From positions 186,001 through 250,000 of IMG/VR virus record IMGVR_UViG_3300032675_000001: DNA of 64,000 bases; one strand, written 5' to 3'. The notes under the pieces are model-generated. The model had not been told where the DNA came from and did no database searches. It worked only from the letters and a program-made list of their open reading frames with translations. A program made the translations under genes and the position numbers. This document shows positions 3,701-33,114 of the stretch, in pieces. How positions within the stretch are numbered: position 1 is the stretch's first letter; the number at the start of each line of letters is the position of its first letter.

Positions 3701-5227
3701 GTATACACCGGTAATACCAATCTCTCAGTAGGTACTGCTGCTTCTAAATATATTAACTTCTTCACTGGAGGCACGTTAGCTGCTAATGAGCGTATGCGTA
3801 TTGATGCTAACGGCAATGTTGGCATTGGTAATACTTCTCCTACGAACAATCTTTCTGTTGCAGGTACGGCATTTATTTCTGGAAACGCTAACGTAGGTAA
3901 TATTGGTGCAACAAACGCTAACGTTACTGCTATAACCGTTTCTGCGAACGCCAATGTTGGTAACTTGGGTACTACTGGATTAATTACCGCAACAGGTAAC
4001 GTCACTGGTGGAAACTTGACTACTGGTGGTCTTGTATCAGCAACAGGTAACGTCACTGGTGGTAACTTGACAACTGGTGGTCTTGTATCAGCAACAGGTA
4101 ATGTCACTGGTGGAAACTTGACCACTAGTGGTCTAGCAAGCACAGGGTCACTTGTTGTTTCTGGAACTTCAAACCTAGGCCCAGTTGGCAATGTTACAAT
4201 AACTGGCGGTACAGCAGGTTATTACCTCCAAACAAACGGATCGGGTGTTCTCTCGTGGCAACCAATCTCTGCTGGATCAGCACTCGTAAGTGGTAATTCA
4301 AATGTCACTGTTGCTGCTAACGCAAACGTAAACATCAGTTCAAACGGTGTAGCTAACGTATTTGTAGTAACAAACACTGGCGTTAACGTTGCCGGTACAC
4401 TAAACGCAACTGGCAATGCTAACGTAGCTAACTTGGGCGTAACTAGTAACATAACTGTTGCCAACTTGACTGTATCCACATTCAGTAATTTGGGATCAAA
4501 CGCCAACGTTGTCATCACTGGTGGTACCAATGGTCAGTATCTACAAACAAATGGTTCTGGTGGACTTTCTTGGGCTACTATTAGTACAGCAGGCGTATCC
4601 AACGGAACTTCAAATATCAGTATTCCAGCAGTTAATGGAAACGTAAATACTTCTGTTGCTGGTAATGCTAACGTATTTGTGGTAACTGGCACTGGCGTAA
4701 ACGTTGCCGGAACGTTGAACGCAACTGGCAATGCTAACGTTGGTAATATTGGCGCTAACAACGCAGTATTTACTTTGGTAACTGGCACTTTAACAACTGC
4801 TGCACAACCAAATATTACTTCTGTTGGTACGCTAACATCATTGAATGTTAACGGCAATGCGAGCGCAAATTATTCTCTGTTAAGTGGAGGTATTGTATCT
4901 AATCGTACAAACGTAGCTGTAACCACTACTGCAACTGTAATTGATCAGTTCCCTCCTGCAACATTTAGAGTCGCCAAGTATATCATTATGGCATCTGGAA
5001 CTAATGGCTATCAAGCAAGCGAAATCTTGTTAGTGCAGGATGGTTCAAATGCATACATAACAGTATATGCTGATGTTATTTCCAATGCCACACCGGGTTC
5101 AGATGTCATTGATATTTCTGCAAATATCAACGGGGTATCTGGTAACGTCACATTGTATGCAGCAGCAAACGCAACTTTTGGTACAACTGCTAATGTTAAC
5201 GTAGTTCCATTGTACTTGAAACCATAA
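791..5227 (+). CDS. Long tail fibre protein, Gly/Asn/Thr/Val-rich (1478 aa)
   Basis: Recurrent YLQTNGSGxLSW and NGNSNV modules, ATGNVTGGNLTTGG repeats, and DAATKNYVD and ERMRIDANGNVGIG motifs typical of phage fibres. Confidence 0.8.
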   Translation: MSTKNFNVKNGLTVGVANIDATTGNTYIGNLVTSGQANLASLVVPGTSNLGPIGNVTITGGSSGYYLQTNGSGGLSWASVPTGTGISNGNSNVNIPVANGNVNISSAGNANIVVVTGTGANVNGSLTVSGVSNLGPVSNVVITGGTSGYYLQTNGSGVLSWQPISVGTALQNGNSNVTVTANSNVNTSVAGVANVFVVTSTGANLTGTFNTTGNANVGNLGTAGLITATGNVTGGNLTTGGIVSATGNVTGGNLTTGGIVSATGNVTGGNITTAGQLVSSVSTGTAPLVVTSTTQVANLNVATAGTASNAGNVQANTSTSSTVYLTGTTSATNAYVSLNFVSGIYANMSNNSITATQFVGTHIGNVQATGANGTVFANNVTISGAAGGNSNVSTVTGNLGLRTIAATYTDTTATSTSTIANAAIHAIGTPTLAAANTAITATNAATFYIQGAPVATGNMSITNPYALFVGGGNSYFAGGANIIGNANAGNIGAATGVFSTAVNTGLVQNGTSNITIASGANVSTFIGGNSTAQMVVTSTGVNVAGYTTVAGNITTSANLITSNITSTGALTITSGGTNTNINIAPIGTGNITANNTNINNLKDPVQAQDAATKNYVDTTAQGLDVKQAVVVATATTLPSYTYNNGSSGVGATLTATTNGALSIDGVAVTVNSRVLIKNEVSGNAPYNGIYSVTQTGNASAVYILTRTADFDLSSPSSEIPGAFVFVNSGTVNQNTGWVCTTTSPVTVGTTAITFTQFSGAGTYTAGTGLTLTGSVFSITNTAVTAGSYGGASQVPTFTVNQQGQLTAASNVAVVAPAGTLSGTTLNSTVVTSSLTSVGTLGTLTVSGNANVGNIGATAGVFTGAVTGAANITGANLIANTGIFAGNTASGNIFIGYDSANLALGEFAGNVNTYIQVALFNSNVGNQASADFAIYDTNGPTSVTNNYIDIGILGNTYSNTSWTINGPSDGYVYTGNTNLSVGTAASKYINFFTGGTLAANERMRIDANGNVGIGNTSPTNNLSVAGTAFISGNANVGNIGATNANVTAITVSANANVGNLGTTGLITATGNVTGGNLTTGGLVSATGNVTGGNLTTGGLVSATGNVTGGNLTTSGLASTGSLVVSGTSNLGPVGNVTITGGTAGYYLQTNGSGVLSWQPISAGSALVSGNSNVTVAANANVNISSNGVANVFVVTNTGVNVAGTLNATGNANVANLGVTSNITVANLTVSTFSNLGSNANVVITGGTNGQYLQTNGSGGLSWATISTAGVSNGTSNISIPAVNGNVNTSVAGNANVFVVTGTGVNVAGTLNATGNANVGNIGANNAVFTLVTGTLTTAAQPNITSVGTLTSLNVNGNASANYSLLSGGIVSNRTNVAVTTTATVIDQFPPATFRVAKYIIMASGTNGYQASEILLVQDGSNAYITVYADVISNATPGSDVIDISANINGVSGNVTLYAAANATFGTTANVNVVPLYLKP

Positions 5228-7648: not shown

Positions 7649-11146
<3,498 letters not shown>

Positions 11147-14713: not shown

Positions 14714-14962
14714 ATGGCACAGTTTCATGTGAGATATAACAAAACTCGCGGAGAGATAAACAGAGGAACGATGGATCATGTCTGGCGTGTGTTCAGGGAT
14801 GGAAAAGAATATCTATGTAAACATGTAATCATAAATGTTCCTAGCTACGGTGCCAATACCAATGGTGATTGGAGTATTTGTTGTGAAGGGGAAATGATAA
14901 TCAACAGAGAAACATCCACTATTACTATAGAAAAAAGTGAAACAGATCATGAAATTTTATGA
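14714..14962 (+). CDS. Hypothetical protein, related to the N-terminal domain of 31423..32013
   Basis: The YNK...WRV..GKEY...HV...VP pattern is shared with the amber-containing gene. Confidence 0.6.
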   Translation: MAQFHVRYNKTRGEINRGTMDHVWRVFRDGKEYLCKHVIINVPSYGANTNGDWSICCEGEMIINRETSTITIEKSETDHEIL

Positions 14963-16633: not shown

Positions 16634-17329
16634 ACTATTTATTCTAAAAATAATAATCCTTGCGGATATTATGTTTATGCATATTTGCGTAGCAAAGATT
16701 CTATCATTGCCAAAGTAGGAACCCCATACTATATAGGGAAAGGCATAGGACAACGGGCGTGGTGTCATTTTAAGGATGAGGCCACCCAACCACCGGTTGA
16801 TCACCGATATATAGTAATATTAGAATCCGGTCTTACTACTACCGGAGCACTCGCAATAGAACGCAGAATGATACGTTGGTATGGCCGAATCGATATCGAC
16901 CATGGTGGTATTTTAAGGAACATAACAGAAGGAGGGGATGGTGCTTCTCTGTCAGGAAAACTAAATGGAATGTACGGGAGAACTGGTGAATTACATCCTC
17001 ATTATTGTAAAAAAAGATTTGACATGATTGGTGATCTTAATCCGATGTTCGGGAAACGTGGTGAAGAACATCCGGCATTTGGGTATAGACATTCAGATGA
17101 ACGTCGAAAGAAAATTGCCGATTCCAAAAAAGGGGTTAAGCGAACCGTGTTTGATCAATCGGGAGAAAAGAATCCAATGTTTGGAAGAAAAGGTGAAGAC
17201 CACCCAAGTTTCGGTAAAAATCCTCCTAAAATAGTGTGTCCGAATTGCAGAAAGTTGGTAAGCAATGCAATGTTTGTGCGGTGGCACCAAAATGACAAAT
17301 GTGTACGGAAAGACAAAAATAGTGATTAA
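16631..17329 (+). mobile_element. Free-standing GIY-YIG-type homing endonuclease with NUMOD3-like repeats
   Basis: YYVYAYLR...[19 protein letters not shown], and repeated G..NPMFGK / HSDERRKKI. Confidence 0.85.
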
Positions 17330-18974
17330 TATTGTAAAGCGATCAGGAAAAAAAGAACCACTTAGCCTAGAAAAATGGCAGGCCCAAGTTGCTAAGGTAT
17401 GCAACGGGACTGCTGATGTAAGTCAATCAATGATTGAAATTAAGGCACACCCACATTTTTATGACGGAATCACTACCCAAGAGATTGATGAGATTACTCT
17501 TAGGGCCGTTGTGGATTTGATTGATGTAGAATCCAATTCAGACGTTGGACACACTAATTACCAGTATGTCGCCGGAAAGCAGAGATTGTCCATGTTACGG
17601 AAATCTGTCTATGGACAATATAACCCACCATCATTGTATGAGATTGTAAAGAAAAACGTTTCGGTGGGCCTTTACACGCCAGAACTCCTTGAATGGTATT
17701 CCGAAGATGAATGGAATAAAATGAATGATTTCATAGATCATACTAAGGATGAAGCGTACTCATACGCCGCAATCGAACAACTTATTGAAAAATATCTTGT
17801 TCGCAATAGAGCCACAAAGGAAATCTATGAAACTCCGCAGGTTCGTTACATGGTTGCAGCAGCAACCGTTTTTCACAGGGAGGAACCAAACACCGCAAGA
17901 ATGCGATTCATCAAAGAATACTACAATGCGGCCAGTGATGGGCTTTTTACTCTCGCTACCCCAGTACTTGCTGGCCTTGGAACTCCGACCAAACAGTTTA
18001 GCAGTTGTGTTCTTATTAGGAGCGATGATGACCTCGATAGTATTTTCGCTTCCGGAGAAATGATGGCAAAATATGCCAGCAAACGTGCTGGCATTGGCTT
18101 GGAAATCGGAAGACTTCGCCCTCTCGGTTCGCCTATCCGAGGGGGTGAAATCATGCATACTGGTATGATTCCATTTCTAAAGAAATGGTTTGGTGATTTG
18201 CGTTCTTGTTCTCAGGGAGGTATTCGCAATGCAAGTGCTACAGTATTTTATCCTATCTGGCATTATCAGTTTGACGATCTCATCGTTCTTAAGAACAATC
18301 AGGGAACTGAGGAGACCCGAGTGCGCCACATGGATTACGGGGTTGTCCTTTCAGGAATGTTCTGGAGAAGATTTAAAAACAAAGAGAACATTACGTTCTT
18401 CGATCCTAACGAAGTGCCTGATTTATATGAAGCCTTCTATTCAAACACGGCTAAATTCGAAGAACTCTACGTAAAATACGAAAAGCGTAAAGATTTACGC
18501 AAGAAGGTAATGAGCGCAGAGGAAGTCTTCAAGAGTGGCATTCTCAAAGAACGCACTGACACTGGACGTATCTATCTTGTATTCATTGATAACGTGATGA
18601 ATCAGGGTCCATTTGACCCTGAATACCACACTATCTATCAATCAAATTTGTGTTGTGTAACCGGAGACACTGTGGTTGAATTTCTACATCCTGACGGGAG
18701 AACTGAAAAAATGTCAGTAATGAGTGCCGTTGAAAGATTTCAACTTGGTGCGCTGACTGAATCAAAAATTAAGAGTTTTAGTAATGGAGAAGTTTCTTGG
18801 GAAAATGTTTCCGCTGCCATTAAAACCAAAACCGTTACTGAACTCTATGAAATTGAAGATGAATATGGCAATGTCTTGAAGTGTACTGGCGATCACTTGA
18901 TATACACTAAAAATCGCGGCTATGTTCGTGCAGATGAGTTAGTAGAAACAGACGAGTTATGTTCTGAAATTTGA
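17322..18974 (+). CDS. nrdA: Ribonucleotide reductase class Ia alpha subunit, N-terminal fragment fused to the N-half of a split intein (18654-18971)
   Basis: ATP cone (IVKRSG), [23 protein letters not shown] followed by intein CVTGDT...[12 protein letters not shown] start at 17322. Confidence 0.95.
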
Positions 18975-19007
18975 TTACCGAGTATAAATACATATGGAGA
19001 GCTTCAT

Positions 19008-19946
19008 ATGTATAAAGAACTGTATAAATTGTTGATTGATAATGCAAAGAAAGAGAACCGAATGAAAAATCAGGAAAATTATTATGAACGACACCATGTG
19101 GTTCCTGATTTCATGTTCAAAAACAGAAAGAGACCTGGACCAGTGGGGCACTTAGATGGTGATCCTGATTCTCCAGAAAATATTGTTTTTCTTACTTTTC
19201 AAGAACATCTTTTGGCGCATTATTATCTATATGAAATATATAAAGATACTCGTTATGAGTATTCTGCTGGCTCAGCCCTACAGTTTTTCTTTGTAAAAGC
19301 CACTGGAAATCACAAAAGACAATTAAATCTGTCAGAAGTAGATAAATCGTTTCTTAATGAAATGGAGCATTTGCGATTGTTAGGAAATGAAAGTATCAGC
19401 AAGGCGAGAAAAGGTAAGATGCCAGTAGTTGATGCAGTGACTAGAGAAAAAATCGGTTCTGTATCAATTAATCATCCCAAGGTGATATCAGGTGAATGGG
19501 TGCATCATAGTAAAGGCAAAAAGCAAACTTGGAAACATCGCTCAATGAAGGGCTCTATGAATACGAATTTCAAAGAATTGACACACGATAGAAAAGAACG
19601 CTTGTGGAAATGTGTAGCCGCTTCATGTGAAGAAGGTCATCTCAAGAAGAAACTATTATGCGAAGCATTGAAAAAAGAGTTTACCGAATTCAAAAAGATT
19701 TCATTAGCTTGGATAAAAAATAACTATGATTCATTTGATGATCTAGTTAAAGAAACAAATAAGAATTTAAAGCTGATCATAAAGTATGATCCATATCATA
19801 GAAGTAATGAGCAACGAAATTTGAATGCAATACAATCTTCAAAACATCGTTGGTATAATAACGGTAATCACAACATTAGAGTTACCGATGTTGACACTTT
19901 TATTAAAAACAATCCAGAATACATACCGGGAAAAATTAAATTATGA
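19008..19946 (+). mobile_element. Free-standing HNH homing endonuclease between the nrdA halves
   Basis: YERHHVVP...D.PEN.V.LT..EHLLAHYYL (MobE-like); TATAAATA late promoter at 18983. Confidence 0.85.
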
Positions 19947-21031
19947 TTAAGATTAGAAAAATTGAGGTAGAACCAACTGATGTATATGATCTATCTGTTC
20001 CAGAAACCGAGTGTTTTTTTGCAGACAACATGTTAGTTCACAACTGTGAAATTCTACTTCCGACAAAATCATTTAAGAGCCTTGATGATGAAAATGGCAG
20101 AATTTCTCTCTGCACTCTTGGTTCAATGAACTGGGGTGCATTTAGGAATCCAGAAGATATGCGTAGAGCGTGTCGCATTCTGTTACGAAGTTTGAACAAC
20201 ATTCTTGACTATCAGGATTTCCTGTCCATTCAGTCTAAGCTGTCAAACGATGAGATTAGACCAATCGGGATCGGAGTCACCAATCTTGCATATTGGTCCG
20301 CTAAACGCGGATACAAGTACGGCGAAGCAGAAGCGTTGCAGGAAATCAAGAGTTGGGCAGAGCATCAGACTTATTACTTGATGGAAGCTAATGTTGAGCT
20401 TGCTAAGGAACGCGGACCTTGCTTGCATTCTGACAAGACTCGTTACGGACAGGGAGTTTTCCCTTGGGAACTTAGAGCAAAGGGCGTAAATGACCTTGCT
20501 GACTTTACTCCTGAACTTGACTGGGAAAGCCTCAGAGCCGATATGATGACTTACGGTGTTCGTAACTCTACAGTTGGTGCTATTGCTCCTGTTGAATCAT
20601 CATCTGTTGCTATCAACTCAACTAATGGTATAGCGATGCCTATGAGCCTGATTTCAATCAAGGAATCAAAGGCAGGTTCATTCACTCAAGTTGTTCCAGA
20701 ATACCACAATGCAAAGGTTCGTAAGAACTATCAGTTGATGTGGGACCAGACAGACTGTATCGGATACTTGAAAACCGCAGCAGTATTGGCAGCGTATATG
20801 GATCAGTCCATCAGCACTGATACTTTCTACAACCCTGCTCACTTTCCTGATCGCAAGGTACCAACTACGCTCATCGCAAAGAACCTAATGTTGGCATATT
20901 ACTGGGGAATTAAGACCTTATACTATAGCCTTGTCAACAAACAGGGCGCAAAAGAAGAAGCAGATGAGGCACCACTTGAAGTCATTGACTTCTTTGAAGA
21001 AGACGGTGACTGCGAAAGTTGCAAGCTATGA
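19943..21031 (+). CDS. nrdA: Split intein C-half (19943-20044) plus the ribonucleotide reductase alpha C-terminal fragment
   Basis: MIKIRKI..VYDLSV..FFADNMLVHN|CEI, then LCTLG, IGIGVTNLA, KTLYY and C-terminal CESCKL. Confidence 0.95.
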   Translation: MIKIRKIEVEPTDVYDLSVPETECFFADNMLVHNCEILLPTKSFKSLDDENGRISLCTLGSMNWGAFRNPEDMRRACRILLRSLNNILDYQDFLSIQSKLSNDEIRPIGIGVTNLAYWSAKRGYKYGEAEALQEIKSWAEHQTYYLMEANVELAKERGPCLHSDKTRYGQGVFPWELRAKGVNDLADFTPELDWESLRADMMTYGVRNSTVGAIAPVESSSVAINSTNGIAMPMSLISIKESKAGSFTQVVPEYHNAKVRKNYQLMWDQTDCIGYLKTAAVLAAYMDQSISTDTFYNPAHFPDRKVPTTLIAKNLMLAYYWGIKTLYYSLVNKQGAKEEADEAPLEVIDFFEEDGDCESCKL

Positions 21032-30087: not shown

Positions 30088-30351
30088 ATGAGCGATAATA
30101 GAGAGAAGAAGTCCATGCGCCGCGCAAAAACGGTGAATGCTATTGAACGTCAAAAACGTATAGCCAAAGCTGCAGGCGTAAATCATACCAAGAATCAGCC
30201 ACACCGTTATGCAAAGATGCATTCATTGAACTGTGGTGATCCTGATTGTGTAATGTGTGGAAATCCTCGCAAGTTTTTCAAAGAGCGCACATTGCAAGAG
30301 AAAAAGTTTATTGAAGGCACAAAACTTGATGCCCAAAATGGTTGCATTTAA
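30088..30351 (+). CDS. Small basic Cys-containing phage protein
   Basis: CGDPDCVMCGNPRK. Confidence 0.65.
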   Translation: MSDNREKKSMRRAKTVNAIERQKRIAKAAGVNHTKNQPHRYAKMHSLNCGDPDCVMCGNPRKFFKERTLQEKKFIEGTKLDAQNGCI

Positions 30352-30379: not shown

Positions 30380-30454
30380 GCGTCTGAGGTTGAGTGGCAT
30401 CACACGGGTCTCTAAAGCTCAGGATAGCGGGTTCGAATCCTGCCAGACGCGCCA
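30380..30454 (+). tRNA. Amber suppressor tRNA (anticodon CTA)
   Basis: Acceptor GCGTCTG/CAGACGC plus GCCA; T arm GCGGG-TTCGAAT-CCTGC; loop CT-CTA-AA in a wobble-rich CGGGT/GCTCA stem. Confidence 0.75.
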
Positions 30455-30474
30455 ATATTCTACAGGAGAATAAA

Positions 30475-31020
30475 ATGAGTGACGCACTTCCAACTGTCGT
30501 TCCGGCAGTAGTATTTAAGACTCGTGTCCGTGATGACAGCATCGAAGGACCTAATCCATATCGTTGGCAGGATGTAACCTCCTACGATTACTTCGGTGGC
30601 AAGCGAGTCGTTCTTTTTTCCCTTCCGGGTGCATTCACCCCAACTTGTTCAACTTACCAGCTTCCTGGATTTGAGCAGAATTTTACTGCTTTTCAGGAAC
30701 TCGGCATTGATGCAATCTATTGCCTTTCAGTTAACGACTCATTCGTAATGAACAAGTGGGCACAGGATCAGGGTATTCAGAATGTTCAAGTTATTCCGGA
30801 TGGTTCTGGTGTTTTCACTAGCGCGATGAACATGCTTGTTGCCAAGGACAATCTTGGCTTTGGTGCTCGTTCATGGCGCTATGCAGTCATCGTGGACAAC
30901 GGTGTCATTGAAAAGTGGTTCATTGAACCGGGAATTGAGCATAACTGTGCAACTGATCCATATGGTGAAACTTCGCCTGAGAATATTCTTGCCTATCTTA
31001 ACGGCTTGAATCAGGGATAA
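30475..31020 (+). CDS. Peroxiredoxin (Prx5/type II)
   Basis: LPGAFTPTCS, SVNDSFVM..W, RSWRYA. Confidence 0.93.
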   Translation: MSDALPTVVPAVVFKTRVRDDSIEGPNPYRWQDVTSYDYFGGKRVVLFSLPGAFTPTCSTYQLPGFEQNFTAFQELGIDAIYCLSVNDSFVMNKWAQDQGIQNVQVIPDGSGVFTSAMNMLVAKDNLGFGARSWRYAVIVDNGVIEKWFIEPGIEHNCATDPYGETSPENILAYLNGLNQG

Positions 31021-31023
31021 GCT

Positions 31024-31401
31024 ATGAACACTGTATTGTGGCTGCTGGTAGCATTTCAAATTAAACATTTTGTCTGTGACTTTCTGTTGCAGCCAGAATA
31101 CATGTGGAAAAATAAGGGGACTCTGGGACATCGTGGTGGAATTGATCACGCGGTGTTCCACGCCCTTACTACTTACGGGATTCTGTTGTATTTTTCGGTT
31201 CCAGTAGTTGAAGCATACACTATGTTTCTGCTTGAGTTCTTTGCTCACTACTTCATTGATTATGCAAAGATGAACATCAATCGTATCAAGGGCTGGAAAG
31301 CTGATACTCATCCTCAGTTTTGGAATGCACTGGGGCTTGATCAACTGCTACATCAACTAACTTATGTAGCTATTCTTGCATTCATTAATTTACCGCACTA
31401 A
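31024..31401 (+). CDS. DUF3307-like membrane protein
   Basis: HFVCDF.LQ, H...H, HYFID, DQLLH. Confidence 0.75.
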   Translation: MNTVLWLLVAFQIKHFVCDFLLQPEYMWKNKGTLGHRGGIDHAVFHALTTYGILLYFSVPVVEAYTMFLLEFFAHYFIDYAKMNINRIKGWKADTHPQFWNALGLDQLLHQLTYVAILAFINLPH

Positions 31402-31422
31402 ATATATCAAAGGAGAATAACA

Positions 31423-32013
31423 ATGGCATAGATTGAATACGCATGTAAAGATGTAGTCTTCCATTTCAATAAGAAGCATCTGGAAGATCAGACCATTCCC
31501 ATGTGGGTCGTTAAAACACAGGGTAAAACCTACTATGTAGAGCATGTGGAATGTACGGTTCCATGGTCTACCAAAGAAACCCCAGATAATCCTAGCACTA
31601 AAGGCAGCATCAAAGTCAAAGACTGTCTTCTCGTCATTGACGAGGAAAACTGTGCCAACATCACTAAACTCACTGCACATGACAAGATTCGTCTTCGTAA
31701 TGAGGCGAAGGGTATAACTCGCATCGTGTATACTTACAACGGTAAGAAAGATGTTGAAGACGCCATCAATCAATCCAAAATCAAACATGGTCCATTCAAG
31801 ACGCTTGGTGGCGGGTGCGGCACAAAATTTTATGTAACGGAAATCATGAATAAATCAGAACTATCATTCCTGACACTATCGGCGGGTGACAAGTTCCGTG
31901 TCCTTATGCCAAATGAAAAACAGTATCAAGACTATGATGATCCTAATCATGATCCTGATTGGTATTGGAAACAAGAGGTTGAAGAAGATGAAGACGAGGA
32001 TGAAGATGATTAA
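31423..32013 (+). CDS. Hypothetical protein with an in-frame TAG at codon 3 (readthrough candidate or amber pseudogene)
   Basis: AGGAG-ATG GCA TAG ATT GAA..., in frame with ORF 31501..32013. Confidence 0.7.
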
Positions 32014-32197
32014 TAGTCAGCGTATCGTAGTTCCTAAAAAGGATTTTAGAAAGGTAGAGCAGGCTATAAAACAGTCTGGAGTAAAATTCTACCCCTTCTC
32101 AAAAACTTCTGATGGATATGAAATCGAGTTCACGCCTCAAGATCACCCATTGGTATCGTATCTTTTACTAAAGTATGATGTGTCTATGATTGACTAA
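32006..32197 (+). CDS. Hypothetical protein
   Basis: ATG at 32006, coupled to the upstream stop. Confidence 0.5.
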   Translation: MINSQRIVVPKKDFRKVEQAIKQSGVKFYPFSKTSDGYEIEFTPQDHPLVSYLLLKYDVSMID

Positions 32198-32220: not shown

Positions 32221-33114
32221 ATGTCAGTAATTATTTTATCTAAGCGTCCAGAAGAGTACGAATGCATTCGGCTACTTGAATCATTTCAAAAACTAGATAT
32301 TAACGCTGGCATTACCCATCCAGATAAATATGACATCGTGGTTAATCAGTCTAATGAAACTGGTATCAAGTATGAAGGTCTTGCCATTGAAAAGCCAAAG
32401 TTGTTTCTTACTCGCACCGGTTCGGGAACAAACAACTTTGCAAGAGCATTGATAAGGCAATTTGAACAAGAGGGAATACTTACAGTAAATTCATCTGACA
32501 GTATTGAGATTGCAAAAGATAAGATGAGAACTTCTCAGATTTTAGCAAGCAATCATATTCCCATTCCAACAACAATGCTTGTTCGCTTTCCCGTAGAAAT
32601 TGATATTGTGGAAAACAAGATAGGCTTCCCGTGCATCGTTAAAGTTCTGAATGGTAGTTACGGTGAGGGAGTCTATCTTTGCGAAAAGAAAAGAGACTTC
32701 AAAAAACTGATGGAGTTTGTAGACTCATTGAAGAGTGCAAAAACTCTTATTGTTCAGGAATATGTAGGTCACCGACCGGGAGAAGACCTTAGGGTTTTTG
32801 TAGTCGGTGGTAAAGTGATCGGGGCCATGAAACGTGTTGCTCCTGTCGGTGACTTCCGCGCCAACATTACAAATGGTGGACACGGAGAACGTTTTGAAGT
32901 CACCGACGAAATTGACTATATTGCTCGTGAAACTGCACGAGTATGTGGATTACAGATTGCTGGTATTGACTTACTGTTTGATGAAAATGGATTCAAAGTT
33001 TGTGAAGCGAACTCAGCACCGGGATTTGAGGGATTCGAGAAATACTGTGAAGTGAATGTTGCTGATCATATTGCTGAGTTCGTGAGATTCAAGCTAAATG
33101 GTATCAATTCTTAA
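32221..33114 (+). CDS. rimK: RimK-family ATP-grasp peptide ligase
   Basis: AKDK, GSYGEGV, QEY, DLRVFVVG, FRAN..GG, GIDL, CEANSAPGFEG. Confidence 0.9.
   Translation: MSVIILSKRPEEYECIRLLESFQKLDINAGITHPDKYDIVVNQSNETGIKYEGLAIEKPKLFLTRTGSGTNNFARALIRQFEQEGILTVNSSDSIEIAKDKMRTSQILASNHIPIPTTMLVRFPVEIDIVENKIGFPCIVKVLNGSYGEGVYLCEKKRDFKKLMEFVDSLKSAKTLIVQEYVGHRPGEDLRVFVVGGKVIGAMKRVAPVGDFRANITNGGHGERFEVTDEIDYIARETARVCGLQIAGIDLLFDENGFKVCEANSAPGFEGFEKYCEVNVADHIAEFVRFKLNGINS

What the first reader, a model, noticed from the sequence alone, without database searches (positions are those of the whole stretch)
30380..32013. Amber suppressor tRNA plus a nearby gene with an in-frame TAG at codon 3
Seen: a solitary tRNA outside the main array, with loop CT-CTA-AA and G73, has its own sigma70-like promoter. 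Its loop differs by one base from this phage's tRNA-Trp loop (CTCCAAA). About 1 kb downstream, TAAATA and a strong AGGAG RBS precede ATG GCA TAG ATT GAA TAC (31423), in frame with ORF 31501-32013, which has no obvious RBS of its own. The codons after the TAG appear to be coding: VVFHFNKK...MWVVKTQGKTYYVEHVECTVP aligns with the intact paralog at 14714 (FHVRYNKT...VWRVFRDGKEYLCKHVIINVP). The rest of the window reads in the standard code. Inference: gene-specific amber readthrough acting as a timing or dosage switch, or an early stage of TAG reassignment.
Basis: partly seen in the sequence, partly recalled or inferred. Interest (0 to 1): 0.85.

Follow-up and report, generated by a model that had tools for sequence, protein, structure and literature searches.

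The report
Suppressor-tRNA-gated phage gene with early amber codon
A giant phage carries its own amber-suppressor tRNA next to a conserved gene whose third codon is a UAG stop; the same pairing recurs in hundreds of related phages, so the stop looks like a deliberate translational gate and identifies target genes for suppressor tRNAs whose targets were previously unknown.

Summary
A cloverleaf tRNA with anticodon CUA lies at 30380-30454. About 1 kb downstream, AAGGAG-N7-ATG GCA TAG (31429) continues in frame into a conserved ORF that ends at TAA 32013.

It is neither a sequencing error nor a private mutation. In 70 of 82 related phage loci the homologue has a 1-9 codon leader followed by an in-frame stop at the same place. 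That stop is TAG every time, never TAA or TGA. Database proteins that show Q at this site are TAG at the DNA level (6 of 6 checked). A same-strand tRNA(CUA) lies within 10 kb in about 40 of 50 dereplicated TAG loci, often adjacent.

These genomes otherwise use the standard code. A second family, PTH2 peptidyl-tRNA hydrolase, shows the same design, and its stop type matches the suppressor present in six phages (four TAG/CUA, two TGA/UCA), three of them cultured or near relatives (Phosso, Atu_ph07).

Best reading: the suppressor tRNA acts as a trans-acting licence for translating a small set of genes. The physiological purpose (timing, conditional expression or feedback) and the gated protein's function remain unknown; its fold matches no solved structure. 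I found no prior description.

The parts
30380..30454 (+). Amber-suppressor tRNA: anticodon CUA, U33, A37, G1-C72, G73, encoded CCA, short variable loop. It stands alone, about 14 kb upstream of the tRNA array.
   Evidence: ARAGORN; Rfam RF00005 at 39.8 bits. Thirty homologous tRNA(CUA) genes show compensatory changes in 17 of 19 pairs.
31410..31415 (+). Shine-Dalgarno sequence AAGGAG, 7 nt upstream of ATG 31423. It is positioned to serve the ATG, not the TAG.
   Evidence: Sequence. The same SD-to-ATG spacing holds in the homologues whatever the leader length.
31423..31428 (+). Two-codon leader, ATG GCA (Met-Ala).
   Evidence: Leaders of 1-9 codons (most often 2) occur in 70 homologous loci.
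31429..31431 (+). In-frame amber codon TAG (the gate), followed by A (ATT).
   Evidence: The stop at the equivalent position is TAG in 70 of 70 homologous loci, and TAG in 9 further contigs from ENA, Logan and NCBI.
31432..32013 (+). Body of the gated gene (193 codons plus TAA, then a tandem TAG). It has an N-terminal beta-rich 'FHFNK' domain (about residues 1-80), a C-terminal alpha/beta ACT-like domain and an acidic tail.
   Evidence: Homologues align from the first residues after the TAG. AlphaFold2 pLDDT is 88 for the full length and 93 for the N-domain. No Pfam or PHROG family matches and no significant PDB fold match.
32003..32197 (+). Small downstream ORF (64 aa). Its ATG overlaps the last codons of the gated gene, so it is probably translationally coupled to it.
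   Evidence: Sequence. A homologue sits immediately after the long-form gene in 17 of 57 dereplicated loci.

Best explanation
This is a conserved phage cassette: a dedicated amber-suppressor tRNA plus a client gene whose ORF opens with a strong Shine-Dalgarno sequence, ATG, a 1-9 codon throw-away leader and then UAG. Ribosomes start at the ATG. Without the phage tRNA(CUA), RF1 ends translation after a di- to deca-peptide. With the charged suppressor, the UAG is read as sense and the full protein is made (here 195 aa). The overlapping downstream ORF is then probably translated through coupling. The tRNA therefore acts as an orthogonal, trans-acting licence for translating a very small regulon in a genome that otherwise uses the standard code. 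In related jumbo phages the same device, with UAG or UGA to match the suppressor present, gates a PTH2 peptidyl-tRNA hydrolase operon that also contains the FHFNK-domain gene. What is shown: the anatomy, its conservation, its exclusivity to TAG, the linkage to the tRNA, and the stop/anticodon covariation. What is inferred: that suppression actually happens; that the purpose is conditional or delayed expression, tying these translation-associated proteins to the moment when the phage's own tRNAs are expressed, processed and charged; and that the inserted amino acid does not matter, because it lies in a non-conserved leader. The biochemical function of the gated protein is unknown. Its association with PTH2, tRNAs and (in 7 of 57 loci) a RimK-like ligase points to translation or tRNA metabolism.
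For: (1) Of 82 homologous loci, 70 have an in-frame stop 7-11 codons before the invariant FHFNK motif, and all 70 are TAG (no TAA, no TGA). Each is preceded by an in-frame ATG 1-9 codons upstream with a Shine-Dalgarno sequence placed for that ATG. Local terminator usage is TAA 561, TGA 331, TAG 60.
(2) An independent database holds 1487 homologous clusters. Among the top 120, 78 have a leader with 'Q' at that site and none has any other residue there. All 6 proteins checked (9 contigs) have TAG at the DNA level.
(3) The family's true stop codons are TAA or TGA only.
(4) A tRNA(CUA) lies on the same strand within 10 kb in 31 of 50 dereplicated TAG loci by default ARAGORN, and in about 40 of 50 with relaxed ARAGORN plus a covariance model. 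In 24 of 26 loci that hold a single tRNA, that tRNA is CUA. Overall 52 of 485 tRNAs are CUA, none is UUA and one is UCA. Spacing is often 12-140 nt, or the two overlap.
(5) The tRNAs are under structural selection: 17 of 19 pairs show compensatory changes, and U33-CUA-A37 is invariant.
(6) The genomes use the standard code. Same-frame split ORFs number TAA 31, TGA 17, TAG 4. The early-stop signature numbers TAG 36, TGA 1, TAA 1.
(7) PTH2 genes (Pfam PF01981) carry the same leader-plus-stop, and the stop matches the suppressor. TAG with CUA: L152, L160, Phosso (tRNA 'Pyl' CTA), and L090 (weak PTH2-like). TGA with UCA: L153, and Atu_ph07 (suppressor UCA reported in PMC6102473).
(8) The TAG is ancestral in the main clade: 47 of 50 members keep it, with 3 isolated losses.
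(9) In homologues without the TAG, the Met start sits exactly where the TAG would be, so the leader plus TAG is an add-on gate rather than part of the protein.
Against: There is no direct evidence of suppression: no proteomics, ribosome profiling or charging data. The amino acid inserted is unknown, and the tRNA resembles no isoacceptor. About 10 of 50 TAG loci show no clear tRNA(CUA) within 10 kb, although some of these have truncated flanks or odd CCCUAA-loop tRNAs. Several TAG-less homologues still have a tRNA(CUA) nearby, so the tRNA has other roles or other clients. When the tRNA and gene are co-transcribed, a simple two-input AND gate is less obvious. Purine at the +4 position (59 A, 11 G of 70) fits efficient suppression but is confounded by the conserved Ile/Val residue at that codon. 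The purpose (timing, dosage or sensing) cannot be distinguished from sequence alone.
Confidence: 0.72

Rival explanations
1. Feedback sensor rather than timer. The early UAG measures the balance between suppressor activity and RF1 termination, as the in-frame UGA of prfB measures RF2. The gated proteins (FHFNK protein, PTH2) would then adjust suppression, peptidyl-tRNA turnover or translation. The molecular event (suppression at the UAG) is the same; only the purpose differs.
For: The clients are linked to translation: PTH2, adjacency to tRNAs and a RimK-like ligase downstream in 7 of 57 loci. The gene family stays linked to a tRNA(CUA) even when it has lost its own TAG. From general knowledge, a stop at codons 2-10 makes failed attempts cheap, and RF-mediated release is reported to be poor on very short peptides (minigene literature; recalled, not tested here).
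Against: Nothing shows that the FHFNK protein acts on the tRNA, RF1 or ribosomes. Its fold matches nothing in the PDB. No frameshift or other prfB-like element is present.
Confidence: 0.25
2. Termination-reinitiation. The Met-X-stop unit is a tiny upstream ORF, and the main ORF is translated by ribosomes that reinitiate at the next codon (ATT, ATC or GTT) without any suppressor.
For: The codon after the TAG is often ATT or ATC (43 of 70), which can act as near-cognate starts. In TAG-less homologues the start Met occupies the TAG position.
Against: Reinitiation does not need a particular stop codon, yet 70 of 70 are TAG, although TAG makes up only about 6% of stops. TAG-to-TAA is a single transition and is never seen. 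The codons after the stop also include AAT, AAA, ACT, AAC and GAA, which are not start-like. This model explains neither the tRNA(CUA) linkage nor the TGA/UCA versus TAG/CUA covariation in PTH2.
Confidence: 0.06
3. Early step toward genome-wide TAG-to-sense recoding (code 15), as in crAss-like or Lak phages.
For: A suppressor tRNA is present and TAG is the rarest stop. The published model places acquisition of a suppressor before recoding (Borges et al. preprint).
Against: The TAG is ancient and fixed at one position in one family. In-frame TAGs are not enriched in other genes (TAG 4, TAA 31, TGA 17 for same-frame splits). TAG still terminates genes. In the window, 31429 is the only such site.
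Confidence: 0.05
4. Artefact or dead gene: a sequencing error, a private nonsense mutation, or a protein that really starts at Met 31501.
For: Code-11 gene callers start the gene at 31501 or at a GTG near FHFNK.
Against: The same TAG appears in more than 80 independent contigs from IMG/VR, ENA, Logan, NCBI (including GOS) and a cultured phage. The 23 residues before Met31501 include invariant positions F10, H11, N13, K14. No Shine-Dalgarno sequence precedes 31501.
Confidence: 0.01

Closest known systems
Stop-codon-recoded phages with suppressor tRNAs (crAss-like, Lak, 'Agate', 'Jade' and others; Ivanova 2014; Borges et al., bioRxiv 10.1101/2021.08.26.457843)
   Same: A phage-encoded suppressor tRNA allows translation of phage genes that contain in-frame stops in a standard-code host. 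It is proposed to act as a post-transcriptional regulator of when genes are expressed.
   Different: In those phages, tens to hundreds of genes (structural, lysis) carry many in-frame stops at arbitrary positions, and the stop is lost as a terminator. Here the genome uses the standard code. A single stop sits at codons 2-10 behind a dedicated leader in one or a few specific small genes, is conserved across a deep family, and is usually physically linked to the tRNA.
Synthetic amber-suppressor gates (supD/T7 RNAP-amber AND gate, recalled from memory; suppressor-tRNA feed-forward 'leak dampener', PMC7969014, seen only as a title and abstract)
   Same: The architecture matches: amber codon(s) near the start of the target ORF plus a suppressor tRNA, so that protein appears only when both the mRNA and the tRNA are present.
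   Different: Those gates are engineered. This one is natural and evolutionarily conserved. Whether the tRNA and mRNA are controlled separately is unknown, because they are often adjacent on the same strand.
prfB (RF2) autoregulation by an early in-frame UGA
   Same: An in-frame stop early in the ORF makes expression depend on the competition between termination and an alternative decoding event.
   Different: prfB needs a +1 frameshift and senses its own product. Here decoding stays in frame and depends on a separate tRNA gene. No link between the product and termination has been shown.
Orphan suppressor tRNAs of cultured jumbo phages (Atu_ph07 UCA, PMC6102473; XacN1 CUA x2, PMC5852040; AP-J-162 'tRNA-Pyl' CUA, PMC11242549)
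   Same: They are the same kind of tRNA in the same kind of phage. Atu_ph07 and Phosso belong to the clade that carries the FHFNK domain.
   Different: Those papers reported no target genes. XacN1's authors looked only at C-terminal readthrough and found none. The early-stop PTH2 genes found here are candidate targets in Atu_ph07 and Phosso. I found no early-TAG gene within 20 kb either side of XacN1's suppressors.
Lambda bar minigenes / two-codon ORFs (recalled from memory)
   Same: SD-ATG-one sense codon-stop units.
   Different: The bar minigenes are stand-alone and act by peptidyl-tRNA drop-off. Here conserved coding sequence continues in frame straight after the stop.

Membership tests
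Functional amber-suppressor elongator tRNA | Cloverleaf maintained by selection | tested here: met
   Rfam tRNA 39.8 bits. Of 19 pairs, 17 show compensatory double changes across 30 homologues.
Functional amber-suppressor elongator tRNA | Seven-nt anticodon loop with U33, C34-U35-A36 and a purine at position 37 | tested here: met
   The loop is CU-CUA-AA in the window. T-CTA-A is invariant in the alignment.
Functional amber-suppressor elongator tRNA | Elongator rather than initiator: paired 1:72 and no three consecutive G-C pairs in the anticodon stem | tested here: met
   G1-C72 is present in 29 of 30. The anticodon stem varies. The Shine-Dalgarno sequence serves the ATG, not the TAG.
Functional amber-suppressor elongator tRNA | Aminoacylated and able to suppress UAG in vivo | not testable with these tools
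   Requires charging assays or a reporter. Isotype could not be inferred.
Pyrrolysine system (the ARAGORN/GenBank label 'tRNA-Pyl') | Atypical tRNAPyl architecture (very small D-loop without G18G19, 3-nt variable loop, non-canonical T-loop; criteria recalled from memory) | tested here: not met
   The window tRNA has GG in its D-loop, a canonical GGTTCGAATCC T-arm and a roughly 5-nt variable region. The label follows from the anticodon alone.
Pyrrolysine system (the ARAGORN/GenBank label 'tRNA-Pyl') | pylS and pylBCD genes present | not tested
   Only about 20 window proteins were scanned against Pfam. None was Pyl-related, but the scan was not exhaustive.
Genome-wide TAG-recoded (code 15) phage | Many genes interrupted by in-frame TAG | tested here: not met
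   The window has one site. Across 57 loci, same-frame splits number TAG 4, TAA 31, TGA 17.
Genome-wide TAG-recoded (code 15) phage | TAG no longer used as a terminator | tested here: not met
   TAG ends 60 of 952 long open segments and about 4 plus-strand genes in the window.
Genome-wide TAG-recoded (code 15) phage | Phage-encoded suppressor tRNA | tested here: met
Programmed C-terminal readthrough (Q-beta A1 type) | The stop ends a functional ORF, and readthrough adds an extension | tested here: not met
   The ORF upstream of the stop is only 1-9 non-conserved codons. All conserved sequence lies after the stop.
uORF termination-reinitiation | Works with any stop codon; a start or near-cognate codon lies at or near the stop | tested here: not met
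   The stop is TAG in 70 of 70. The following codons include AAT, AAA, ACT, AAC and GAA.
prfB-like autoregulatory recoding | Early in-frame stop plus an obligatory frameshift; the product acts on that stop | tested here: not met
   The early stop is present, but coding continues in frame 0. Whether the product acts on termination cannot be tested.
Natural suppressor-tRNA translational gate (the class proposed here) | Stop type in the leader covaries with the anticodon of the co-resident suppressor | tested here: met
   PTH2: TAG with CUA in L152, L160, L090 and Phosso; TGA with UCA in L153 and Atu_ph07. FHFNK family: TAG with CUA.

The most novel reading that the evidence does not exclude
Many standard-code jumbo and T4-like phages may run a previously unrecognised translational control layer. 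An orthogonal suppressor tRNA (CUA or UCA) would act as a trans-activator of a small 'stop-gated regulon' (the FHFNK-domain protein, PTH2 peptidyl-tRNA hydrolase, and ORFs coupled to them), through a stop codon placed 2-10 codons after the start. This would give a function to the orphan suppressor tRNAs of phages such as Atu_ph07 and Phosso. It would couple a translation-remodelling module to the state of the phage's own tRNA pool or to the RF/suppressor balance.
Probability: 0.5. Interest if true: 0.88.

Novelty: new variant of a known kind. Interest (0 to 1): 0.8.

Why it matters
Suppressor tRNAs are regularly reported in large standard-code phages with no known purpose. The Atu_ph07 and XacN1 papers could not name targets. 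This finding supplies concrete, testable targets and a simple rule for finding more: look for a matching stop just after the start codon, not at gene ends.

It also shows that gene callers systematically mis-annotate these genes. They are truncated at an internal Met, left unannotated (RHph_I1_18), or translated with code 15 so that the stop appears as Q.

If confirmed, it is a natural counterpart of the amber-suppressor gates built in synthetic biology, and a gene-specific form of recoding distinct from genome-wide code change. It also flags an abundant aquatic-phage protein family (1487 database clusters) with a fold that matches no solved structure and a likely role in translation.

Tried and rejected
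- **Megablast of the region against cultured phages:** no match.
- **Family searches for the gated protein:** Pfam, PHROGs, PDB sequence search and the ESM Atlas gave nothing.
- **Fold searches:** Foldseek against the PDB gave only weak ACT-like similarity for the C-domain and nothing for the N-domain. BFVD returned only uncharacterised phage proteins.
- **Amino-acid identity of the tRNA:** nearest-isoacceptor comparison gave no consistent isotype. The tRNA-Trp origin is rejected.
- **'Q' in database homologues as evidence for Gln:** rejected. The Q is code-15 translation of TAG.
- **Initiator-tRNA/UAG-start idea** (the TAG sits where TAG-less homologues have their ATG): rejected, because of G1-C72, the Shine-Dalgarno spacing to the upstream ATG, and the in-frame ATG that is always present.
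- **Bypassing, hopping or frameshifting:** rejected, because conserved codons follow the TAG directly in frame 0.
- **TAG 62660 as a second readthrough site:** rejected. It lies in a terminator-like hairpin, and the next gene has its own ATG.
- **The sigma70 promoter claim:** not supported by the consensus scan.
- **XacN1:** no early-TAG gene within 20 kb either side of its two suppressors. The whole genome was not scanned.
- **Bacterial and archaeal genomes:** only 6 hits, all MAG contigs that look like phage DNA, so no host was assigned.
- Scanning genome contigs with alignment A1 failed for lack of a conserved stretch, so I used A3.
Full report
**What is in the window**

ARAGORN finds 35 tRNAs. 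Thirty-four lie in an array from 44.3 kb onward. One stands alone at 30380-30454 (+) with anticodon CTA. Rfam's tRNA model scores it 39.8 bits, above the gathering score of 29. Its loop is CU-CUA-AA, position 73 is G and the CCA end is encoded.

Downstream lie a peroxiredoxin gene (30475-31020) and a DUF3307 membrane-protein gene (31024-31401). Then comes AAGGAG (31410-31415), 7 nt, ATG 31423, GCA, TAG 31429, ATT GAA TAC GCA TGT. This stays open in frame to TAA 32011, which is followed by a tandem TAG. ATG 31501, where a code-11 ORF finder starts the gene, has no Shine-Dalgarno sequence.

- The 'sigma70 promoter' (TTGCAT-16-TATAGT) was not called by the consensus scan.
- The resemblance to the tRNA-Trp loop is trivial, because the tRNA bodies are unrelated.
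- The paralog at 14714 is only 27-30% identical.

**The window uses the standard code**

A crude gene call gives stops of TAA 49, TGA 30 and TAG 10, and about 4 of the TAG stops end plus-strand genes. A scan for SD-ATG-(1-12 codons)-stop-long ORF returns only 31429 as a stand-alone gene; the two other TAG hits lie in alternative frames inside larger genes. Same-frame ORF pairs split by a single stop are no commoner for TAG than for TAA or TGA. TAG 62660, which is followed in frame by a long ORF, sits inside a terminator-like hairpin, and the next gene has its own ATG.

**The stretch after the TAG is coding, and the TAG is conserved**

tblastn of the post-TAG translation hits cultured phages from residue 4-6 onward, well upstream of Met31501. 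In Rhizobium phage RHph_I1_18 the homologue is unannotated. Its DNA reads AGGAAAGG-N7-ATG AGT GAG TTC ATG TAG AAC GAA TCG TGC..., and a tRNA annotated 'tRNA-Pyl(cta)' begins 12 nt after its stop.

A profile search of IMG/VR returned 80 loci; two are 100% identical to the window, one of them a 360,683-bp contig. Together with the three cultured-phage loci, this gave 82 loci with the FHFNK anchor. Of these, 70 have an in-frame stop 7-11 codons upstream of the anchor. All 70 are TAG. Each is preceded by an in-frame ATG 1-9 codons upstream (most often M-X-TAG), with AGGAG about 7 nt before that ATG.

The base after the TAG is A in 59 cases and G in 11. This fits the known preference for a 3' purine in amber suppression (recalled from memory), but it is confounded by the conserved Ile/Val at that codon. 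The true stop codons of the family are TAA or TGA only.

Of the 12 loci without the stop:
- 7 start with Met exactly at the TAG position (L007, L048, L057-60, L080).
- 5 carry the domain as the C-terminal part of a longer protein (Atu_ph07, Phosso, L072, L073, L079).

**Independent confirmation from other data sets**

The 5.8-billion-protein database holds 1487 homologous clusters. None is named and none has a Pfam domain. Among the top 120, 78 begin with M-x(1-4)-Q-[ITVL]E..C, 0 have any other residue at that site, about 14 begin with Met at the site, and 18 are truncated.

The Q is an artefact of code-15 gene calling. For 6 of 6 proteins looked up (9 contigs from NCBI including the GOS marine metagenome, ENA and Logan), the codon is TAG.

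Among 185,579 bacterial and archaeal species genomes, only 6 MAG contigs carry the family. Four of the 6 have leader plus TAG. Three of those four have a tRNA(CUA) beside them; the fourth (L172) has an odd tRNA that ARAGORN calls tRNA-???(ct), and a fifth, TAG-less locus (L175) also has a tRNA(CUA). The family is in effect specific to phages.

**Linkage to the suppressor tRNA**

I used 10-kb flanks and dereplicated to 57 loci. The tally was:

| Gene | tRNA(CUA) within 10 kb | Loci |
|---|---|---|
| TAG | yes | 31 |
| TAG | no | 19 |
| no TAG | yes | 5 |
| no TAG | no | 2 |

- Every tRNA(CUA) is on the gene's strand.
- Of 485 tRNAs, 52 are CUA, 0 are UUA and 1 is UCA.
- In 24 of 26 loci with exactly one tRNA in 20 kb, that tRNA is CUA. 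One of the two exceptions is the UCA suppressor.
- Relaxed ARAGORN thresholds and a covariance model built from the CUA tRNAs recover further CUA tRNAs in 9 of the 19 'missing' loci. That brings the total to about 40 of 50. Several of the remainder have truncated flanks or unusual CCCUAA-loop tRNAs.
- The tRNA-to-gene distance ranges from an overlap of 14 nt, through 12-140 nt, to a few kb.

The tRNAs are clearly functional molecules. Seventeen of 19 predicted pairs show compensatory changes, and U33-CUA-A37 is invariant. Most share G1-C72, C2-G71, G3-C70 and A73 (G73 in the window), but they resemble no isoacceptor. The amino acid therefore cannot be assigned. By E. coli precedents (recalled from memory), Gln or Lys (through U35) or Leu (A73, anticodon-independent) are candidates. 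Because the site lies in a non-conserved leader, the identity probably does not matter.

**These are not recoded genomes, and the device is used on other genes**

Across the 57 loci, long open segments end in TAA 561, TGA 331 and TAG 60. Same-frame splits number TAA 31, TGA 17 and TAG 4. The early-stop signature numbers TAG 36, TGA 1 and TAA 1. Thirty-one of the 36 are the FHFNK gene. The other five are:
- PTH2 peptidyl-tRNA hydrolases in L152 and L160 (Pfam PF01981, E 1e-20 and 3e-25).
- A weak PTH2-like gene in L090 (E 0.016).
- A GIY-YIG/NUMOD3 homing-endonuclease gene in L091, inserted next to the FHFNK gene and copying its 'MA*IEY' start.
- One likely false positive (L102).

Following PTH2 into the Atu_ph07-like clade gave these pairings:

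| Phage or locus | PTH2 leader | Suppressor |
|---|---|---|
| Phosso | ATG AAG TAT TAG | annotated tRNA-Pyl (CTA) |
| Atu_ph07 | ATG ATT GGC GAA CAC TTT TGA | single suppressor, UCA (Attai et al. 2018, PMC6102473) |
| L153 | ATG...CGC TGA | tRNA(UCA) about 4 kb downstream |
| L152, L160, L090 | TAG | tRNA(CUA) |

The stop type matches the suppressor anticodon in all six. In Atu_ph07 and Phosso, the annotated PTH2 CDS starts at an internal Met and lacks the first 12 or more profile positions. In that clade the genes PTH2, a hypothetical ORF and the N-extension-plus-FHFNK gene overlap by 4 nt. The FHFNK protein there is therefore probably gated indirectly, through translational coupling.

**Evolution**

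On a maximum-likelihood tree of 56 distinct domains, the fusion clade plus L080 (6 rows, no TAG) separates from a main clade of 50 rows. In the main clade 47 rows carry the TAG, and the 3 exceptions are isolated tips. The TAG is therefore ancestral and has been retained, while the leaders (MA, MS, MK, ML, MSQQ, MTTL and others) and the protein (down to about 57% identity) have diverged. TAG-to-TAA is a single transition, yet it is never seen. The site is under selection to remain specifically an amber codon.

**What the gated protein is**

AlphaFold2 with a 52-54 sequence alignment gives a confident model: pLDDT 88 for the full length and 93 for the N-domain alone. The protein has three parts:
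- a beta-rich N-terminal domain of about 80 residues, with invariant F10, H11, N13, K14, W25, G31, H38 and the block P-W-S-T-K-E-T-P-D-N-P-S-T-K-G;
- an alpha/beta C-terminal domain with weak ACT-like similarity;
- an acidic tail.

Short forms (about 80 aa, N-domain only) and long forms (about 185-205 aa) both occur. Foldseek finds nothing significant in the PDB for either model and only uncharacterised phage proteins in BFVD. The function is unknown.

The context points to translation. The neighbours include suppressor tRNAs, PTH2, a conserved overlapping small ORF (17 of 57 loci) and, in 7 of 57 loci including the window, a RimK-like ATP-grasp ligase just downstream.

**Mechanism**

The most economical reading has four steps. 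Ribosomes load at the Shine-Dalgarno sequence and ATG. At codon 2-10 they meet the UAG. RF1 then releases a tiny peptide, unless the phage tRNA(CUA) is present and charged. If it is, the full protein and the coupled downstream ORFs are made. The suppressor thus acts as an orthogonal translational activator of a very small regulon.

I rate 'suppression at this UAG by the phage tRNA produces the protein' at about 0.7-0.75. The purpose is inferred and unresolved. It could be delay or conditional expression tied to expression and charging of the phage's tRNAs. It could equally be a prfB-like feedback on the suppression/termination balance.

Rejected alternatives:
- **Reinitiation:** excluded by the exclusive use of TAG, the non-start codons after the stop, the tRNA linkage and the TGA/UCA covariation.
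- **Initiator tRNA reading UAG:** excluded by G1-C72 and the Shine-Dalgarno spacing.
- **Bypassing or frameshifting:** coding continues in frame 0.
- **Pyrrolysine:** the tRNA has a canonical architecture.
- **Nascent genome-wide recoding:** the TAG is ancient, fixed at one site, and the genomes are standard-code.
- **Sequencing error or pseudogene:** excluded by the comparative data.

**Relation to what is known**

Phage suppressor tRNAs and stop-codon recoding as a regulatory strategy are established for genome-wide recoded gut phages (Borges et al.). A gene-specific N-terminal stop gate with a linked dedicated suppressor, in standard-code phages, did not turn up in five full-text searches. 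The papers on Atu_ph07 and XacN1 name no target genes for their suppressors, and the XacN1 authors state explicitly that they could not identify any. The closest functional analogues are synthetic amber-suppressor gates. I therefore class this as a new variant of a known kind, with high interest.

**Caveats**

- All the evidence is comparative.
- About a fifth of TAG loci lack a detectable tRNA(CUA) within 10 kb.
- Only 64 kb of this 360-kb phage was examined.
- I found no early-TAG gene near XacN1's suppressors, so the rule may not hold for every phage.

Noticed in passing
L002 387-398 (Phosso, PV764938), L003 432-452 (Atu_ph07, MF403008), L152 8633-8656, L153 8607-8630, L160 9028-9042: PTH2 peptidyl-tRNA hydrolase genes of Atu_ph07-like jumbo phages start with a 3-7 codon leader followed by an in-frame TAG or TGA that matches the phage's suppressor tRNA. 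The GenBank CDSs start at an internal Met and are truncated at the N-terminus.
   Followed up: yes
window 32221-33114 (and 7 of 57 related loci): A RimK-like ATP-grasp ligase (the ribosomal protein S6 glutamylation family) lies just downstream of the gated gene. The long-form gated proteins end in an acidic D/E tail, which raises the possibility that they are its substrate.
   Followed up: partly
L091 5327-6001: A GIY-YIG/NUMOD3 homing-endonuclease gene is inserted directly upstream of the FHFNK gene. It begins ATG GCA TAG ATT GAA TAC (MA*IEY), apparently a duplicated copy of its neighbour's gated start.
   Followed up: partly
L070, L071, L074-L078 (e.g. L070 4223-4297 against the gene end at 4237): In one subgroup the tRNA(CUA) gene overlaps the last 14 nt of the gated ORF. 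RNase P processing of a co-transcript would therefore remove the mRNA's stop codon.
   Followed up: no
L126 9735-9811, L127, L172 322-398, L159 15472-15549: These are unusual tRNAs whose anticodon loops contain CCCUAA or GCCUAA. ARAGORN calls them '???(ct)' or Arg(cct). They sit where a CUA suppressor would be expected and may be non-canonical UAG decoders.
   Followed up: partly
L159 8600-8720: The PTH2 homologue here is preceded by GGAG-N8-ATG AAC ACA GCT ATG CAG TAG GTT CTG TAG, in a different frame from the PTH2 domain. This could be an indel, a pseudogene or a frameshift. It is unexplained.
   Followed up: no
window 17265-21031: The ribonucleotide reductase large subunit is split into two ORFs with intein splicing-domain matches at the junctions, and an extra ORF (19008-19946) lies between them. 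This looks like an intein with an endonuclease insertion.
   Followed up: no
window 7649-11146: A collagen-triple-helix repeat protein (1165 aa) lies in a locally GC-rich stretch (55% against 42%). The repeat composition creates very long spurious antisense ORFs.
   Followed up: no
window 14714-14962: An 82-aa distant paralogue of the FHFNK N-domain (27-30% identity) starts MAQFHVRYNK and has no in-frame stop. BFVD shows the same small beta fold in several uncharacterised phage proteins, some fused to DUF2061.
   Followed up: partly
L178 20514-23007 (XacN1 AP018399, about 36.5-39.0 kb): A stretch of about 2.5 kb with no annotated gene, and no long plus-strand ORF, lies immediately after XacN1's two tandem tRNA-Sup(CUA) genes. 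It may be a structured RNA or something else that was missed in annotation.
   Followed up: no
window 30088-30351: A small basic Cys-rich protein (phrog_4499) lies immediately upstream of the suppressor tRNA. A homologue lies 0.8-4.4 kb upstream of the gated gene in 18 of 57 related loci.
   Followed up: partly
window 32587-32615 (-): A sub-threshold Rfam match to CRISPR-DR41 (28.6 bits against a gathering score of 36) lies inside the RimK-like gene. It is probably chance.
   Followed up: no
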